Shown here piece after piece: positions 5,619 through 58,452 of a stretch of DNA of 64,000 bases. Position numbers and translations under genes: made by a program. The notes under the pieces were generated by a model. It was not told the origin of the DNA. It saw only the letters and a program-made list of their open reading frames with translations, and did no database searches. The stretch spans positions 62,001 to 126,000 of the forward strand of contig NW_025765792.1 of the NCBI RefSeq assembly GCF_003918875.1, written 5' to 3'. The DNA is from Haliotis rubra. Lineage: Eukaryota. Each line of letters opens with the position of its first letter. The stretch's first letter is position 1.

Positions 5619-5775
5619 GTGAGTGAGTGAGTTTAGTTTTACGCCGTTTTAGCAATATTCCAGCAACATCACGGCGGGGGACACCAGAAATTGGCTTCAC
5701 ACATTGTACCCATGTGGGGATCGAACCCAGGTGTTCAGTGTGACGAGCGAACGCTTCAACCACTATGCTACCCAC
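5619..5775 (-). mobile_element. SINE family A
   Basis: Close match to family consensus. Confidence 0.93.
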
Positions 5776-6099
5776 ATTACAAAACAGGAACAGAAAGGTG
5801 GAAATGAATTCCAGTACAAAATGCGGTTGTCATAAGCACTGAAATATCATAAATAAAAACATGCTACGTAACCCAGTGTCACGTGTTATGTACCCAGTGA
5901 ATTATACCAATTATGTATATATTGAGAAGAAACCATACTTCCTTTGTTCTTCCACTGTCATTAAACGATACACCATACACTAGTTATACTTTAAATATCG
6001 GTTCCTCTCTCATATCCTTTTTTCATATTATATACATCGAGCTTTCTGGCGCTGTGTATCAACAATAGCCCATTGTGGTGGCCAACTGTAGTTCGGATT

Positions 6100-6924: not shown

Positions 6925-7095
6925 GTGAGTGAGTGAGTGAGTATGGTTTTACGCCGCTTTTAGCAATATTCCAGCAATATCACGGCGGGGAACACCAGAA
7001 ATGGGCTTCACACATTGTACCCATGTGGGGAATCGAACACAGGTCTTCTGCGTGACGAGCCAACGCTTTAACCACTAGGCTACCCCACCGTCCCG
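6925..7095 (-). mobile_element. SINE family A
   Basis: Full length; TSD ATACCCCATTGA. Confidence 0.95.
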
Positions 7096-7419
7096 AATAC
7101 CCCATTGAATAGTTATGATTGGTGATGATTAAAGTGTAGTTGCATGTATTATGTATTCGGTGAACATTTGTATAATGACACATGCATCATCTGTGAATGT
7201 ATACTGTCGATAGATTATGTTCCATATACCATATACATGCACATGACATATTTATATGGTGTATACGTGTATAATAATACACGCAGAATATGTACACTGT
7301 ATAATGTACTTTGTTCCATATATTATGTATATATACTGATGACCCACTCAGTGTCACACGTTTACAATGCCATACGCATAGTGCCCACTGTATTAATGAC
7401 CCATACACAATCCACATGT

Positions 7420-20594: not shown

Positions 20595-20700
20595 GATATT
20601 TTTATGGACAGACAACTTCTTTATTACAATAAACTCGATGTTTCGGTGTAGATGCTAACACTGTTATCAAGTCAAGGGATACACAACATTATGGACAAGG
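20595..20700 (-). mobile_element. Penelope-like terminal repeat remnant with decayed minimal hammerhead motif
   Basis: Minus strand TTGATAA-CAGTG-loop-CACC-GAAA-CATC followed by AATAAA. Confidence 0.45.
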
Positions 20701-20764
20701 AGAAATATATACAAGAAGGGTACAACTGAAGAGGTTGATGTGCAGTGTGATGATATTACTAAAT

Positions 20765-20930
20765 GGGGCGGTGGGGTAGCCTAATGGTTAAAGCGTTGGC
20801 TCGTCACGCCGAAGGCCCGGGTTCGAATCCCCACATGGGTACAATGCGTGAAGCCCATTTCTGGTGTCCCCCGCCGTGATGTTGCTGGAATATTGCTAAA
20901 AGCGGCGTAAAACCAAACTCAGTCAGTCAG
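20765..20930 (+). mobile_element. SINE family A, (AGTC)n tail
   Basis: Full length; TSD TGATATTACTAA. Confidence 0.95.
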
Positions 20931-22149: not shown

Positions 22150-22386
22150 ATTTAGTAATATAAAGAAATATCTTTGTTGCCTATTTGTCAGTCTTAAGAC
22201 AGTGATATGTTATGACGCAGCCATTGAAGGGGTAAAATATAATGTGAAATTTGCGGTTTTCATTAAATCCACTCTTACTGACAAAGCTTGTTGTTATTTA
22301 TGATATGATTCTACCTTTTGAGCCCCATAGAGCGTCGTTGACGTTTGATATACTGAACAAAAGGCCAAGGGTCAATAGTGTTTTGG

Positions 22387-22618
22387 ACCCGTGAAGATCC
22401 GGGTTGAAATTGATCATACTTGTCGTAAGAGGTGGCTAACTGGATCGGGTGGTTAGGGTCGCTGACTTGGTTGACACATGTCGTCGTATCCCAACTGATC
22501 GATGTTCATGATGTTGATCACTGGATTGTCTGGTCCGGACTCAATTATATACAGACCGCTGCCATATAGCTGGAATATTGCTGAGTGTGGCGTCAAACTA
22601 AACTCACTCACTCACTCA
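22387..22618 (+). mobile_element. Family B with intact ends
   Basis: ACCCGTGAAGATCCGGG start, small internal deletion; TSD TAGTGTTTTGG. Confidence 0.93.
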
Positions 22619-23886
22619 TTAGTGTTTTGGGTCCTTTGGTTTTTGTAGTGAAGATTGAGCACACACACACCATTTCATACACATGCCCTCAAAATATTAC
22701 TGTACCCCAACGTCTTTTGTTCAAAATATCATAGTATTATTTTGACATTACTACCAGTACTAAATGAAATGAATACGACAAAACAATGTTCATAAACATA
22801 CAATCTCCGTTGAAAGCACAAATGCATAGATATATGTAGAAAAAGCGCACAACACATTTCGTTCATAAAACACACGATACCTCAACGTTGTCAAGACAAC
22901 AGCATTTAACCCGCTGACCTTTCAACTGTCCCGGAAGAGGGGATGATATGTAAAAAGAATCACTCTAACATGCTATTTCCGGTTGGTTGCTTAAGGTTTT
23001 TGTAAAATCATTGCACGTTTTGCATCATGTTATCTTATTATTCGCACTTGAGGATTACATTTTTCCACGTTTTAACCCCAAAGGTGCTATGCTTTGATCT
23101 GACTGCTAGTTAAACACGCTGGACAATGAAGGTATTGTTCCCAGAAGCCATGTAGACTGTCGGACATGGTCGCTTTGCCTCCATCTCTTCAATTCTATAT
23201 TTATACACCACTTTTAATCTCCCTATCCAGTTTGTTTCCGCATTCGGCGGTGTTAATCCTTTGATGCAAGGGGTTCGAGAGATTAAGACTTGCGTGGTTC
23301 CGACCAAACACTTTCTAATGTCGTCATCTTGTCGAGGACAGGAAGTCAAAAAGTTATGTAGGTTTGAGGTTGGCTTCTCCGCAGTTTGACATGGCTTTGT
23401 CAGATATTTCTGAAATCTGCAATGTATAAAGAACCTATTTGGCACTCAAATCCTCAACATATTTATATGCTGTGAACTTTAATTGAACTTTAATACTGTA
23501 GAGATGTTTCTTGAAAAGCACGCATGTATGTGTACGATATGACTAGGGTCTCTTGAATGTCTTATTTTAAATTTGGGTTTGAGGTTTTGGTTTATCGTGC
23601 GTGTGTGTAATAAATGACAGCCATGAAAAGGATTTAATAAAATAAACATGAACTAAGTTCAAACCTTATTTTTGCAGGTCGACAGATCAGTGGGAGTTTA
23701 CAAAGCCCTTCTTGAATGAATGCAGTTATTAGACAAGCATTAACGTCATTTCGCTTCAATGTTATATTTACATCACATCACAGTTTGGACGTTTACGTAA
23801 GAAGTAAGAAGTAAAACGCATTTCAAAAGAAATTTTAAAGGAACACGACAGCTCTATGCTGACAAACAAGGCGTTATAATGCTTTG

Positions 23887-24616: not shown

Positions 24617-24861
24617 TGAGTGAGTGAGTGAGTGAGTTTAGTTTTACGGCGCACTAAGCAATATCCCAGCTATATGGCGTCGGTCTGTAAATAATCGAGT
24701 CTGGAGCAGACAATCCAGTGATCAACAGCATGAGCATCGACTGGGAACCGATGACATGTGTCAACCAAGTCAGCGAGCCTGACCACCCGATCCCGTTAGT
24801 CGCCTCTTACGACAAGCATGGGTTACTGAAGATCAATATTCTAACCCGGACCTGCACGGGT
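24617..24861 (-). mobile_element. Family B, full length, followed by (GAAT)n
   Basis: Complete 5' domain and tail. Confidence 0.94.
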
Positions 24862-25699
24862 AACGAATGAATGAATGAATGAATGAATGAATGAATGAAT
24901 GTAATAACTCCATATAATAAAATACCATGTCATTAAAACATTTTTTTTTTTTCACAAAGTCATCTATGTTTAGAAATAATTCAGCTAAATGCCATCATTC
25001 AATTGTTGTGTCATCAACGGCAATGAGTTATCATCTTGAACACAGTCAAAACCAACAAGATCTTTCACTTTACTCGTAAATTCTTAATTTCCGTTATTTA
25101 TTCACTCGTTCAGAGCATTGGTCATGAAGTTCGTGTACCGGACACTGGTCAGTTTCAGAGGTCAGCGTTCTTTACACCATAATCCATCCTCTAAAGTGCA
25201 CACTCCACCAATAAAATGACCTATTGTTGTCTGATAATCCTTCCGCGTTCTCTCATCCAGGTTTGGTCACTTTCAGAGGCAATCTTGTTTCGTCTGTGCC
25301 TCCGGGACCGTCTCAAAATCAATTTGCCAAATGCAAAAACGTTTTAGAGTATTTATACAAGACATCGTTTCGAAAAAGTAACATTCTTTATTGTGTTCAT
25401 CAATAGTCCCGCCCATGGCAATGGCAAGAAGTCCAGCAAGTCACTGAACCCAACCACCTGTTCATTTACTCGTCTCTTACGACAAGCATAGGATGTTTAG
25501 AACGACAGTTCAAAAACTAAATTGGGGCGATAGCAATATATTTCTTCCTGTGACTGCGCCTTACCATAATATTTTTTATAACCCCTTTAAGGTGTTTACT
25601 CATGCAGTTGTCAAAGACAAAGGTACTTCTTTAGCACTAGTCTCGAATAGGGTTTCCTTTGTTGTTGCACACAATGACACAAATACAGTCTCGTTTAAT

Positions 25700-36044: not shown

Positions 36045-36127
36045 AAGATATATTTCCTTAGATATATTCTACAGTATTATAAACATGTTTTAAGCTAGTC
36101 CAGATATAATAGCTTCCAACCTCCAAC

Positions 36128-36297
36128 GGGGCGGTGGGGTAGCCTAATGGTTAAAGCGTTGGCTCGTCACGCCGAAGACCCGGGTTCGATTCCCCACATG
36201 GGCACAAGGTGTTAAGCCCATTTCTGGTGTCCCCCGCCGTGATATTGCTGGAATATTGCTAAAAGCGGCGTAAAACTAAACTCAGTCAGTCAGTCAG
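36128..36297 (+). mobile_element. SINE family A, (AGTC)n tail
   Basis: Full length; 13-bp TSD TCCAACCTCCAAC. Confidence 0.95.
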
Positions 36298-47470: not shown

Positions 47471-49104
47471 CACACACACAAAAACGACCCCTCCCCCACC
47501 CTCTATATAATGCTAAATGTCTATAATGGGACGATAGGAAAACCATTACGAAAAGAACCAACCGGTGAAAAACATACATGAAAAAAATTCTTTACTTTTA
47601 ATCCTGGATTAGTTACTGTTGTTGCATCCTAGAAAACACACACTTTTGGACACGGTTTGGTTGTCCTCTCGAGAAAACATTGCTTTGGTAATAGAAACAT
47701 TGCAACAAAGGATTATCGCTATCCAGCGTATCCTGCCACACCGGTGGCACCCGTCATAAACACATGCTAAGTCTAGTCAAGTGTTCACCTGAAGAAAGAC
47801 GGAAACGTAAGGAAGAGTATACAATTAATTGCATGGAACATCATATATCACTGATGCATCAAATTTTGAAATGTCCTCAACATGTCTACCATAAGACCTT
47901 TTCAAAGCTTTACTGAGGCCTATGTTTTAACCTTAATCAAACACCTGAGCAAGAGTGGTATAACGCCATTGAAATCTTGATAGAAAGAGCATGCTCGGTG
48001 TACCCCAAACGCTGTGAAATGTAAACACCAAAGGCTGGAATATTGCTCGACATGAAAAGCTAGTTGACTATTGGAAGGTTGAAATCATCTCTTCTGTCAT
48101 ACTTCCTCGTGGAGATCTTAAACATGTCAAACCAGCACACATCCACCAACTCACTATTCCATTTGCGTTCCTTTGACATGGCAGGATCCTATAATCGTAG
48201 TTTCGAATGCGAATGATCCTTATTGCTGGTTTGCAAATCCGTGCTCGTTGGTTTCATAAAGACCAAACGTCTATGGTCACTAGCAGTTTCCTAGGAAACG
48301 CCCTGGGGTTGATCAGGTACTCCGCTCACCTCATTTATGTCTTGTGTATTTGTATGCCATGTAACTAAAGAAGTTTGAGCTCAACGTATTCCTTCGTCAT
48401 GTCTACGTATTGTACGTACACTTCGTCTTAACATGAGCGAATTCCCCAGTCGACCATATAGGTACGCGTTGACACAATTTCAAGCAACACGCTATGACGA
48501 CCTAAGTACTGTCCAAGATGTTCAAGTACTGTTCATACCATGAAAGAAACATTTATTGTTTGCATGGCATACAGACCTGACCGGTGAATGCCAAAGCCAA
48601 TGGTCATTTCACAATACTATTACATTCACAAGGCAACCTATAATGACGTCATAGGCCACGTGCTCTTTGCGTTCTGCTTGTTACCTTAGTGACAAGAATA
48701 TCCCAAGTCCCCAAGCAAACACAGCGCCAGACATTGCGTGGTGATTCGACATTTTGCCCGAAACCGCTAATTGGCACAAAAATGTAACAATAGTGTTATG
48801 GTTACAGGGAGTGCAGAAGCGTGGAACTGGTAAAGAAATTGATAGCATTTATTACCATGGTGATGATAATCTGGTAATATTTCACTTATATGAAATTTTG
48901 TTTAAAGTTGTAAAATCTGACGGTATCCATTCCTAAACTGTAGTGGTTTTTTGACTGGATGGGAAGATGCCTCAAAGAGCAGATTTTCGAGTTGTTTCAC
49001 AGAATATCTTTGGAAGTTCGTTAAGCAAGCAAATAAATAAAAGTTGACGCGAAGATTATATTTAGAATGCGAAAAGTATATGGCCATTGCTCTAGTAATG
49101 TCCG

Positions 49105-49373
49105 ACCCGTGAAGATCCGGGGTAGAATTAAGTCTTCAGCAACCCATGTGCTTGCCATAAAAGGCGACTATGCTTGTCGTAAGAGGCGACTAAAGGGATC
49201 GGGTGGTCAGTTTCGCTGACTTGGTTGACACATGTCATCGGTTCCCAATTGCGCAGATCGATGCTCATGCTGTTGATCACTGGATTGTCTGATCCAGACT
49301 CGATTATTTACAGACCGCCGCAATATAGCTGGGATATTGCTGAGTGCGGCGTAAAACTAAACTCACTCACTCA
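49105..49373 (+). mobile_element. Family B, full length, duplicated-hairpin subfamily
   Basis: 14-bp TSD CTCTAGTAATGTCC; tandem TGCTTGCCATAAAAGGCGACTA-TGCTTGTCGTAAGAGGCGACTA. Confidence 0.95.
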
Positions 49374-49954
49374 CTCTAGTAATGTCCAATGCATTCAGAA
49401 CAGAGCACCGACTAAAGAAACATACCAGTAAATGACACACGATGAAATCCTTTAAAACGTCCTTGTAAAGATGTATAATCAACGAATCATGATACGGGAC
49501 ATTTAACTGCAGCACAGGTTGATATGTCAAACTGACTAAGGTTAACTTGCCATGCACAAACTATCTCGCAAGTTGCTTGATCTTCTAACCGGCACAGATA
49601 TATACATCTCCGTCGAGGAATCCAATATTCCTCAATCCAAACTCAGCTTAATATCTAAAGAAGGCTTACTTTATCGCAACGTCATAGGCATCACTGTTAT
49701 TTTTCTTCATTTATATTCGAATCATATGTGATAGTTTACATTAATGACATATTTTTGTCACCCTCGAATAAGGTCTTCGAGCCTGTTGGTGTGGCTCGCT
49801 TCCTTCCATGGCTTGCTACCTCAGCAGTACGTGTGATACCGTAAATGTCACTGACTAATAATCGATGTTATTTGTGAATAATGTAATAATGAATTCAAAT
49901 AAGTTATTATGTATGAAACCCTTTGAACATTGATAAAGGCTTAAGACACATGCA

Positions 49955-50164
49955 ACCGTGAAGAACCGGGTTAGAATATTGATCTTCAGTAACCCATGCT
50001 TGTAAGAGGCCACTAACGTGATCGGGTGGTCAGGCTCGCTGACTTGGTTGACATCGATGCTTATGATGTTGATCATTGGATTGTCTGGTCAGGACTCGAT
50101 TATTTACAGACCGCCACAATATAGCTGGAATATTGCTGAGTGCGGCCTAAACTCAGTCACTCAC
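49955..50164 (+). mobile_element. Family B with intact ends
   Basis: TSD TAAGACACATGC. Confidence 0.93.
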
Positions 50165-53479: not shown

Positions 53480-53648
53480 TGAGTGAGTGAGTGAGTTTGG
53501 TTTTACGCCGCTTTTAGCAATATTCCAGCAACATCACGGCGGGGGACACCAGAAATGAGCTTCACACAATGTACCCATGTGGGGATTCGAACCCGGGTCT
53601 TCGGCGTGACGAGCCAACGCTTTAACCACTAGGCTACCCCACCGCCCC
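53480..53648 (-). mobile_element. SINE family A
   Basis: TSD TTTTAGCATCG. Confidence 0.95.
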
Positions 53649-54554
53649 TTTTAGCATCGAATCAATGCAGATTTTAGTCTATTCTCATGTTCCTTATTGC
53701 GTAAGACAGCGGTTCGTCATTCTTCCTACTGCTCAAATCGAGTACATAATTTACTGCCTGTATCATGATTCACTGTTTAGATTACTAATTACTACTTATT
53801 GCACCATATGTATAATGTATATGTATAACTCCAATGTATATGGGCCGGAGGCCCTTTTGTACAATAAACATCTTTGACTTTGACTTGAGTGTGACCCTCC
53901 ATAAAACGGTTTCTGTTGAGTACCAAGGAGAAAACATAAACTAGATAAGATTAAAGAACATTTGTCTCTCTTAAATAATAAAGTTTCGACACACGTATGT
54001 ATGTGAATGTGACCAAGAAATGATCAATGAATGAAAATATGTCAAGTAGTTTGTCATAATTTAACCTCAGGTCATCGTGAAGTAGCCATTCATGGACCTG
54101 GAATTTGATCTTACTCATATGATTGATTTAAATTTGCTCACACGGGCTTTTTGCTAGAGCATGTGAGAAAATGTGTTCTTCATGCCACTGGTGACGTTGT
54201 CCACAGGGGTGATCTAATCCAGCCCCAAACAGTAATTAATGGGGAAAGGGCCTAGGGTCAACGATGTGGCTGAAATTCTGCCGATGTGACTTTAACATTT
54301 AACTCACTCACCCAGGGGCTGGGGAATCACGGTCCCCTTGATCTGTGTTTACCTTGAGCGTGTGTTCAATATAGAAGCATAAAATCATTTATGTCTTTGT
54401 TAACCTTTGCTATCAGCTATGACACATGACCACTTGACCATACAGTCGTGGCGTACATGCAGTATAGGTTTGCTGGGAGAGAGGGCTAAGGTCCTCTGTA
54501 CACTCAATATCTCACATTGTGCCGCTTGTAATTATGGAATATACTTTGTATATA

Positions 54555-57875: not shown

Positions 57876-58452
57876 CAATATATTCAATGAAGAGCAATAT
57901 ACTCAATGAACAGCAATATACTCAATGATGAGAAATGTACTCAATGAAGAGCAATATACTCAATGAGAAATATATTCAATGATGAGAAATATACTCAATG
58001 ATGAGAAATATATTCAATGATGAGAAATATAGAAGAGCAATCTATTCAATGAAGAGCAATATACTCAAGGATGAGAAATATATTTAATGAAGAGTGAGTG
58101 AGTGAGTTTAGTTTTACGCCGCACTCAGCAATATTCCAGCTATATGGCGGCGGTCTGTAAATAATCGAGTCTGGACCAGACAATCCAGTGATGAACAACA
58201 TGAGCATCGATCTGCGCAATTGGGAACCGATGACATGTCTCAACCAAGTCAGCGAGCCTGACCACCAGATCCCGTTGGTCGCGTCTTACGACAAGCATAG
58301 TCGCCTTTTGTGGCAAGCATGGGTCGCTGAGGACCTATTCTACCCCGGATCTTCACGGGTCTACTCAATGATGAGAATTATAGAAGAGCAATATACTCAA
58401 TGATGAGAAATATACTCAATGAAGAGCAATATACTCAATGATGAGAAATATG
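57876..58452. repeat. ~19-bp minisatellite (AATATACTCAATGA(A/T)GAG(C/A)) interrupted by a family B insertion
   Basis: More than 12 imperfect copies flanking 58092-58360. Confidence 0.9.
58092..58360 (-). mobile_element. Family B, full length, duplicated-hairpin subfamily
   Basis: Same internal duplication as the 49105 copy. Confidence 0.95.

What the first reader, a model, noticed from the sequence alone, without database searches (positions are those of the whole stretch)
49105..49205. Family B retroposon starts with a compact pseudoknot instead of a tRNA head: candidate self-cleaving or promoter RNA domain
Seen: copies with intact 5' ends (22387, 24861 minus, 49105, 58360 minus; near-intact 3639 minus, 49955) begin at or within 1-2 nt of ACCCGTGAAGATCCGGG and have no Pol III A/B boxes. 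The ~65-nt consensus head can pair as an outer stem CCCG/CGGG, an inner 8-bp stem TGAAGATC/GRTCTTCA (G-U tolerated across copies), a loop GGGTTA pairing downstream with TAACCC (pseudoknot), a hairpin TTGTC-GTAAGA-GGCGA, then an unpaired CTAA before the closing CGGG. Known: HDV-like ribozymes cap the 5' ends of R2, RTE and L1Tc/Ingi retroelements and have the order P2-P3/L3-P4-C(U/G)AA-P2', with the catalytic C in that junction; Vingi and RTE 5' ends are known contributors to non-autonomous elements. Inference: this is a LINE-derived 5' RNA module, possibly a non-canonical HDV-like fold lacking the usual 5' P1 strand, that sets the element's 5' end. Caveats: it does not fit the canonical HDV descriptor, the pseudoknot shrinks to 4 bp in one subfamily, and individual copies carry mismatches.
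Basis: partly seen in the sequence, partly recalled or inferred. Interest (0 to 1): 0.72.

Follow-up and report, generated by a model that had tools for sequence, protein, structure and literature searches.

The report
Known LINE-type head of abalone SINE
The 100 bases are the start of a very abundant abalone jumping element whose non-tRNA, LINE-type head was described in 2016 (LP-SINEs). It contains one hairpin that looks selected, but the proposed pseudoknot and HDV-like self-cutting fold are not supported.

Summary
Window 49104-49376 is a retroposon flanked by an 11-nt target-site duplication, with an (ACTC)n tail. It starts sharply at (G)ACCCGTGAAGATCCGGG. The head motif occurs 6 times in the window (0.04 expected) and about 96,000 times in the genome (7 in the control).

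It is not new. Matetovici et al. 2016 (PMC4758252) described LP-SINEs in Haliotis. They report a roughly 70-nt head shared with the 5' ends of Nimb and RTE LINEs, propose a promoter role, and mention the L1Tc promoter/ribozyme analogy. This scan has flagged the same head at least nine times on other DNA of this genome.

New here:
- The 8-bp hairpin (7-14/27-34) is kept by Watson-Crick or G-U pairs in every abundant subfamily. One subfamily carries a compensatory A-U to G-C change (2,023 copies against 237 with A/C). The only lineage with an internal mismatch has 8 exact copies.
- The pseudoknot carries two uncompensated changes in abundant subfamilies. As drawn it is also sterically implausible, because a 1-nt linker must cross an 8-bp stem.
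- A lenient HDV descriptor anchored at the 5' end finds no solution, and Rfam finds no ribozyme.

The data fit a nested four-helix fold better. Promoter or processing function remains untested.

The parts
49093..49103 (+). 5' target-site duplication TAGTAATGTCC
   Evidence: Identical 11-mer at 49377-49387 directly after the tail.
49104..49199 (+). Head of the LP-SINE copy. It is the S3 subfamily form, about 96 nt because of the internal 22-nt duplication (the consensus head is about 70-76 nt).
   Evidence: Covariance model hit 49104-49206, 75.8 bits. 97-98% identical copies occur at 40 or more other places. The S3 head core has 3,086 exact genome copies.
49110..49138 (+). Inner hairpin: TGAAGATC (49110-49117), a 13-nt loop, AGTCTTCA (49131-49138). 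This copy has 7 pairs; the consensus has 8.
   Evidence: Predicted in the minimum-energy and alignment folds. Subfamily changes are G-U or compensatory.
49149..49170 (+). 22-nt tandem duplicate of the hairpin unit (TGCTTGCCATAAAAGGCGACTA), diagnostic of the young S3 subfamily
   Evidence: Absent from the other window copies. Present in 34 of 117 sampled copies.
49176..49190 (+). Hairpin GTCGT-AAGAG-GCGAC (consensus positions 48-62)
   Evidence: RNAfold and RNAalifold. No covariation, since pairs vary on one side only.
49200..49314 (+). SINE body specific to Family B
   Evidence: Alignment of nine window copies and BLAST within the window.
49315..49376 (+). 3' tail shared with the tRNA-derived Family A SINE, with ACTAAA (49356-49361) and (ACTC)n (49361-49376)
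   Evidence: Query region 211-270 matches about 20 further places in the window that are Family A copies.
49377..49387 (+). 3' target-site duplication TAGTAATGTCC
58094..58361 (-). Second full-length copy of the duplication-bearing subfamily
   Evidence: 93% identity over 270 nt. Model hit 58262-58361.
24624..24862 (-). Full-length copy of the rare S2 variant (A9C mismatch and G12-U29 in the hairpin)
   Evidence: The exact head core has only 8 genome copies.
22386..22615 (+). Full-length but internally deleted copy, with duplication TAGTGTTTTG(G)
49953..50164 (+). Older copy with duplication TAAGACACATGC

Best explanation
This is the 5' head of an LP-SINE (a SINE with a 'LINE promoter' head), the Hdi_LP/Hmi_LP type already described in abalone. 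It is a short non-autonomous retroposon of about 250-275 nt that is copied by a LINE enzyme. It has target-site duplications and an (ACTC)n tail that it shares with a tRNA-derived SINE.

Instead of a tRNA head it carries a roughly 70-nt module of a kind that also starts some Nimb and RTE LINEs. The module travels with every copy and defines an RNA 5' end at G1/A2.

Most likely it provides the element's own start signal, that is an internal promoter, probably for Pol II as the 2016 authors proposed. In addition its sense-strand RNA forms a nested four-helix fold, and the 8-bp hairpin in that fold is needed for successful propagation.

Shown here: element anatomy, a sharp 5' end, abundance, and subfamily-level maintenance of the hairpin. 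Inferred: promoter function and the role of the fold. It is not an HDV-like ribozyme, and the proposed pseudoknot is not a conserved feature.
For: Anatomy, duplications and tail. Abundance: 95,759 head matches against 7 in the control.

Published identity: PMC4758252 describes duplication-flanked LP-SINEs in Haliotis with a roughly 70-bp LINE-type head, an ACTAAA hexamer before the tandem repeats and a tail shared with other SINEs. ACTAAA and the shared tail are seen here.

No tRNA, 5S or snRNA match.

Hairpin maintenance:
- A28G gives U-G in 38 of 100 listed S1 copies.
- A12G gives G-U.
- The S4 subfamily has G12-C29 in 2,023 exact copies against 237 with A12/C29.
- The only variant with an internal mismatch (A9C) has 8 exact copies.
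- G-U tolerance points to the sense RNA rather than duplex DNA.

Nested fold: the RNAalifold consensus has four helices. The common T36C change turns U36-G44 into C36-G44 in the small helix. On 99 distinct copies 91% of cells are paired, and 11 pairs change on both sides against 4.8 +/- 1.6 in shuffles.

Sharp 5' end: positions 2-8 are constant. Position 1 is G in 61% of copies, against 15-23% G in the flanks.
Against: - No transcription evidence could be obtained. All public runs were available only as contigs, which cannot show RNA starts.
- The LINE homology of the head was not re-tested, and none of 117 sampled heads sits on a LINE in this genome.
- Folding energy is ordinary, with z about -1.
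- Covariation within one genome rests on a few subfamily events. The slid-partner controls show similar numbers of double changes, and the alignment was fitted to the model.
- No recognisable Pol II initiator or downstream promoter element was seen by eye at the start.
Confidence: 0.6

Rival explanations
1. The head is a self-cleaving RNA, either a non-canonical HDV-like fold or a new class. It would cut the element out of longer host transcripts and so set the 5' end.
For: The 5' end is sharp in more than 100 copies. There is no recognisable Pol III promoter. The precedents are L1Tc Pr77, R2 and RTE, where the first roughly 77 nt or more are an HDV-like ribozyme (PMC3185411 and PMC3383444 listed; PMC3774820). 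A hairpin under RNA-level constraint exists.
Against: - No Rfam ribozyme model (HDV-like, hammerhead, twister, hatchet, pistol and others) matches at E<=10 in three copies or at gathering score in the window.
- The lenient 5'-anchored HDV descriptor gives 0 solutions for S1, S3 and S4. It does find the HDV control, and it fires on 79% of shuffles.
- The would-be P1' pairs only with L3, so it cannot place cleavage at position 1.
- The proposed catalytic C lies in a predicted helix.
- The pseudoknot pairs 19:38 and 21:36 are broken in thousands of copies.
- Position 1 is variable.
Confidence: 0.06
2. The head is purely an RNA-level module with no promoter. It would be a 5'-terminal folded RNA recognised by the partner LINE's proteins or needed to finish cDNA synthesis and 5' joining, comparable to 5' protein-binding motifs of R2. 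Transcription would come from outside the element.
For: The hairpin shows strand-specific (G-U tolerant) maintenance. The paper reports the same roughly 70 nt at the very 5' end of LINEs of two clades and several phyla, with no conservation downstream. One to three extra nucleotides lie between the duplication and ACCCG in some copies, as expected from reverse transcriptase end-additions.
Against: About 10^5 dispersed copies need a portable way to be transcribed from the exact first base, and nothing here explains that without a promoter or a processing step. No protein partner has been identified, and the LINE partner in abalone is unknown.
Confidence: 0.2
3. The head is a very degenerate tRNA-derived head that is still transcribed by Pol III.
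For: - Head positions 8-23 match the T-arm region of the co-resident tRNA-derived Family A SINE at 14 of 16 bases. Only 15 of 3,000 shuffles score as high.
- GGTTAGAAT resembles a B box or D loop (own reading).
- The nested fold is cloverleaf-shaped and about 70 nt long.
- There is no T4 run inside the element (consensus).
Against: ARAGORN and the Rfam tRNA model find nothing. The B-box-like motif sits at +16, where no A box can precede it. The youngest abundant subfamily (S3, T19G) moves further from the B-box consensus. The similarity was noticed post hoc and is only modestly significant.
Confidence: 0.07

Closest known systems
LP-SINEs of molluscs (Hdi_LP/Hmi_LP, Lsa_2, Sgl_LP, Oco/Oed_LP; Matetovici et al. 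2016, PMC4758252)
   Same: Haliotis host. Short retroposon flanked by target-site duplications, with 3' tandem repeats preceded by ACTAAA. No small-RNA head. A roughly 70-nt head at the exact 5' end. Tail shared with tRNA-derived SINEs.
   Different: Nothing essential differs. The paper gives no RNA fold, no subfamily analysis and no copy numbers. Those details (the hairpin constraint, the S3 subfamily with the 22-nt duplication, and about 10^5 heads) are added here.
Pr77/L1TcRz of trypanosomatid L1Tc, ingi and their non-autonomous NARTc/RIME (PMC3185411, PMC3383444)
   Same: A roughly 77-nt module at the very 5' end, shared by autonomous LINEs and short non-autonomous derivatives, and conserved while downstream sequence is not. 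It defines the RNA 5' end.
   Different: Pr77 folds as a canonical HDV-like double pseudoknot and cleaves in vitro. The abalone head fails the HDV topology test and matches no ribozyme model.
HDV-like ribozymes at R2 and RTE 5' ends (PMC3774820)
   Same: Position at the 5' end of a non-LTR element. The element order 'stem, hairpin, hairpin, junction, closing strand' looks superficially alike.
   Different: There is no P1 starting at the cleavage site and no P2 strand between P1 and P3. The inner stem has 8 bp where P3 has about 3. The candidate catalytic C is predicted to be paired.
Bipartite non-autonomous LINEs and SINEs with LINE 5'-UTR parts (Kojima 2018, PMC5786205)
   Same: Short elements built from a LINE 5' piece plus a LINE 3' tail.
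   Different: In those SINEs the LINE 5'-UTR piece usually lies behind a tRNA or 5S head. Here it is the head itself.

Membership tests
LP-SINE (Matetovici et al. 2016) | Short retroposon with variable target-site duplications and 3' terminal tandem repeats | tested here: met
   Duplications of 11-14 nt in the window copies and in 39 genome copies, plus an (ACTC)n tail.
LP-SINE (Matetovici et al. 2016) | Head not derived from tRNA, 5S or another small RNA | tested here: met
   ARAGORN finds 0 genes. Rfam finds nothing at gathering score or at E<=10 in three copies.
LP-SINE (Matetovici et al. 2016) | First roughly 70 nt homologous to the 5' end of LINEs (Nimb-17_LMi, I-3_DR, RTE-9_CPB) | not testable with these tools
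   Repbase sequences and the paper's figure and supplement were not available. The claim rests on the paper's text.
LP-SINE (Matetovici et al. 2016) | Haliotis form: ACTAAA-type hexamer before the repeats, and a tail shared with other SINE families | tested here: met
   ACTAAA at 49356-49361. The tail is shared with the tRNA-derived Family A. The genome was identified as Haliotis rubra only by earlier notes of this scan.
HDV-like self-cleaving ribozyme | P1 helix that begins at the cleavage site and pairs with the roughly 7 nt immediately after P3/L3 | tested here: not met
   The complement of positions 35-44 exists only inside the loop (16-21). The descriptor anchored at positions 1-3 gives 0 solutions. 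The rule comes from PMC3774820.
HDV-like self-cleaving ribozyme | Nested double pseudoknot with P2 closing the fold, and an unpaired catalytic C in J4/2 | tested here: not met
   No P2 5' strand fits between the outer and inner stems. C62 of CTAA pairs with G48 in the predicted hairpin.
HDV-like self-cleaving ribozyme | Match to curated covariance models (HDV, CPEB3, drz families) | tested here: not met
   No hit at E<=10 on window 49050-49420, window 22330-22640 or L063:1440-1780.
HDV-like self-cleaving ribozyme | Self-cleavage in vitro that is abolished by a C-to-U change | not testable with these tools
   This needs a bench experiment.
   Only G35 links the 8-bp stem to the second helix. 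By the established geometry of H-type pseudoknots (own knowledge), crossing the shallow groove of 8 bp needs several nucleotides. T19G and T36C are uncompensated in 3,086 S3 copies and about 30% of S1 copies.
tRNA-derived SINE (Pol III type 2 promoter) | A and B boxes in tRNA-like spacing, and a detectable cloverleaf | tested here: not met
   There is only a 14/16 local match to a T-arm region.

The most novel reading that the evidence does not exclude
The roughly 70-nt module could be a previously unclassified functional RNA. It would be a 5'-terminal four-helix fold shared by LINEs of different clades and by LP-SINEs across phyla. It would either cleave by a mechanism unrelated to HDV or recruit a processing or reverse-transcription factor, and so define the element's first base. 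My data exclude only the HDV-type topology and the drawn pseudoknot. They do not exclude a new catalytic or protein-binding fold built around the constrained hairpin.
Probability: 0.07. Interest if true: 0.8.

Novelty: already known. Interest (0 to 1): 0.22.

Why it matters
LP-SINEs are the one reported case where a SINE uses a LINE 5' end as its head. How about 10^5 such copies are transcribed from their exact first base is still unknown. The useful residue of this check is narrow:
- The head has one hairpin that behaves as if selected in the sense RNA.
- The popular pseudoknot/HDV reading can be dropped.
- The question becomes testable with cap-sensitive 5' end mapping and promoter assays.

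It does not change the published picture.

Tried and rejected
1. Cross-species heads for covariation.
- A viral contigs pattern scan gave only chance matches.
- The single metagenome scan returned three abalone-like contigs, PEAW01.
- The genome-contig scan gave none.
- No cross-phylum alignment could therefore be built.

2. RNA 5' ends. All 24 runs were available only as assembled contigs. Laying four of them showed the ordinary S1 head in three organisms but no starts.

3. A LINE carrying the head in this genome. Heads followed by foreign sequence turned out to be nested insertions: a roughly 480-nt repeat in L005/L091 and L039, and a Family A SINE in L086. The window has no ORF of 180 aa or more.

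4. Thermodynamic stability as evidence. The z-score is about -1, so it is not informative.

5. Cap-derived extra G. Position 1 is G-enriched, but T, A, C and 2-3-nt extras also occur, and there is no G enrichment one base further upstream. This is inconclusive.

6. tRNA ancestry. There is only a weak local match.

7. The positive control for my HDV descriptor used the HDV ribozyme sequence recalled from memory. It served only to check the script.

Full report
**What is there**

Window 49104-49376 (+) is one complete short retroposon. It is flanked by the 11-nt duplication TAGTAATGTCC (49093-49103 and 49377-49387). It ends in ACTAAA plus (ACTC)n and begins GACCCGTGAAGATCCGGG.

BLAST and an alignment of nine window copies show the same element many times. 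Target-site duplications also fix the first base for the copies at 22387 and 49955.

Genome-wide, the head 21-mer (up to 3 mismatches) has 95,759 matches against 7 for the reversed control, in a 1.38-Gb assembly. In 39 sampled copies with clear duplications the element starts at ACCCG, preceded by one G (18 copies), nothing (8), T (6) or 2-3 extra bases. Position 1 is G in 61% of 101 copies against 15-23% G in the flanks. It is G in 94% of copies in the youngest subfamily.

**It is a known kind**

No tRNA, 5S, snRNA or ribozyme model matches.

Matetovici et al. 2016 (PMC4758252) described exactly this class as LP-SINEs. These are duplication-flanked short retroposons in Littorina, Haliotis diversicolor and H. 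midae, Ostrea and Saccostrea. Their first roughly 70 bp are homologous to the extreme 5' end of Nimb-17_LMi, I-3_DR and RTE-9_CPB. For Haliotis and Ostrea they report AATATA and ACTAAA hexamers before the tandem repeats, and tails shared between families. The authors propose a promoter role and explicitly recall the L1Tc/ingi 77-nt promoter/ribozyme.

The ACTAAA hexamer and the tail shared with a tRNA-derived SINE (Family A) are present here. Earlier notes of this scan identify the genome as Haliotis rubra (not re-tested). They had already reached the LP-SINE identification on other pieces. I could not re-test the LINE homology, because the figure, the supplement and Repbase were not available. 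No later paper on LP-SINEs is in the library.

**Subfamilies**

From 117 sampled heads I separated four forms.

| Form | Features | Exact core copies |
|---|---|---|
| S1 | Consensus, polymorphic A/G at 28 and T/C at 36 | 5,643 |
| S3 | T19G, A28G, T36C plus a 22-nt tandem duplication of the hairpin unit; the form at 49104 and 58361 | 3,086; copies 97-98% alike |
| S4 | A12G plus T29C | 2,023 with G12-C29, 237 with A12/C29 |
| S2 | A9C, A12G; the copy at 24862 | 8, several in segmental duplicates |

**The fold**

The 8-bp inner hairpin (7-14/27-34) is in every predicted structure. All abundant lineages keep it through Watson-Crick or G-U pairs. S4 carries a true compensatory A-U to G-C change. 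The only lineage with an internal mismatch is tiny. G-U tolerance argues for a constraint on the sense RNA rather than on duplex DNA.

- T19G and T36C break two of its six pairs without compensation, in thousands of copies.
- Only G35 links it to the 8-bp stem. By the known geometry of H-type pseudoknots (own knowledge), that cannot span the stem, so the two helices are alternatives, not a compact knot.

T36C instead improves a nested 4-bp helix (34-37/43-46, U-G to C-G).

RNAalifold on nine diverse copies gives a nested four-helix junction:

| Helix | Pairing |
|---|---|
| Outer | 3-7/65-69 |
| Inner | 8-14/27-33 |
| Small | 34-37/43-46 |
| Hairpin | 48-52/58-62 |

This puts the C of CTAA in a helix.

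I built a covariance model on this fold and aligned 110 heads. On that alignment 91% of cells pair. Eleven pairs change on both sides, against 4.8 +/- 1.6 in shuffles. The slid controls give similar numbers of double changes, and the alignment is fitted to the model. Folding energies are ordinary, with z about -1. The fold is therefore plausible. The hairpin is reasonably supported and the rest is untested.

**HDV-like ribozyme**

In HDV-like ribozymes the cleavage site is set by P1 pairing with the roughly 7 nt directly after P3/L3 (PMC3774820). Here the complement of that segment exists only inside the loop, so nothing can direct cleavage to the element's first base.

I wrote a deliberately lenient descriptor: P1 of 5 bp or more starting at positions 1-3, P3 of 3 bp or more, P2 of 4 bp or more, and a C in J4/2. 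It finds the HDV control and fires on 79 of 100 shuffles of the SINE. It gives zero solutions for the S1, S3 and S4 consensuses.

**What could not be done**

- No cross-phylum heads were obtained.
- Public runs were available as contigs only, so RNA starts, caps and strands could not be read.
- No LINE with this head was found among the sampled copies. The apparent chimeras were nested insertions.

**Verdict**

The pseudoknot/HDV reading is not supported.

The most likely working model is a portable internal promoter plus a sense-RNA fold whose 8-bp hairpin is under selection. A purely RNA-level role or a novel processing RNA cannot be excluded without bench work.

Noticed in passing
window 5619-5900 (-), 6929-7200 (-), 20700-20929 (+), 36060-36292 (+), 53483-53760 (-): Family A is a tRNA-derived SINE with an anticodon-loop GTC (Asp-like) and clear A and B boxes. 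It shares the last roughly 50 nt and the (ACTC/AGTC)n tail with Family B, so both probably use the same LINE partner.
   Followed up: partly
window 49111-49126 against the Family A T-arm region (e.g. window 36150-36170): Head positions 8-23 (GAAGATCCGGGTTAGA) match the variable-loop and T-arm segment of Family A (GAAGACCCGGGTTCGA) at 14 of 16 bases. Only 15 of 3,000 shuffles score as high. This is a weak hint that the LINE-type head may itself have a tRNA-related ancestry.
   Followed up: partly
G000:C7:60365-60487; C15:188867-189162; C56:152193-152324; C890:714732-715591; C2:4365766-4365845: Head cores of different subfamilies (S1, S3, S4) occur in tandem arrays with a period of about 52 nt, or multiples of it, at several unrelated loci. 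The first half of the head has repeatedly given rise to small satellites or multi-head arrays.
   Followed up: no
window 49149-49170 and 58294-58315 region (-): The youngest abundant subfamily carries a 22-nt tandem duplication of the hairpin unit. Three changes (T49C, G51A, G55A) shift its best pairing to TGCC/GGCG, which adds a fifth small hairpin to the junction.
   Followed up: partly
L091:7420-7911 (-) = G000:C2431; L039:812-1320: Two SINE B copies are interrupted at head positions about 68-80 by inserts of about 480-510 nt. The L091 insert is itself a repeat, with about 2,100 first-look candidates and the 40 scored matches at 94-98% identity. Its family was not identified.
   Followed up: partly
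L207, L208, L209 (PEAW01029925.1, PEAW01010040.1, PEAW01029914.1): Three contigs filed in the metagenome collection are packed with abalone-type SINE B copies. One has a different body and a CA-rich tail. They look like vetigastropod host DNA rather than microbial sequence.
   Followed up: partly
window 1-64000: There is no ORF of 180 aa or more on either strand in 64 kb. About 39 BLAST segments match Family B or its shared tail, so the window is very SINE-dense non-coding DNA. It contains 209 N.
   Followed up: no
G000:C1024:297947, 317026, 318704 (L055, L045, L036): Several S2-type copies share the same upstream flank (…CTTCTTTACATTT). They are segmental or tandem duplicates rather than separate insertions, which makes the S2 lineage even smaller than its count suggests.
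   Followed up: partly
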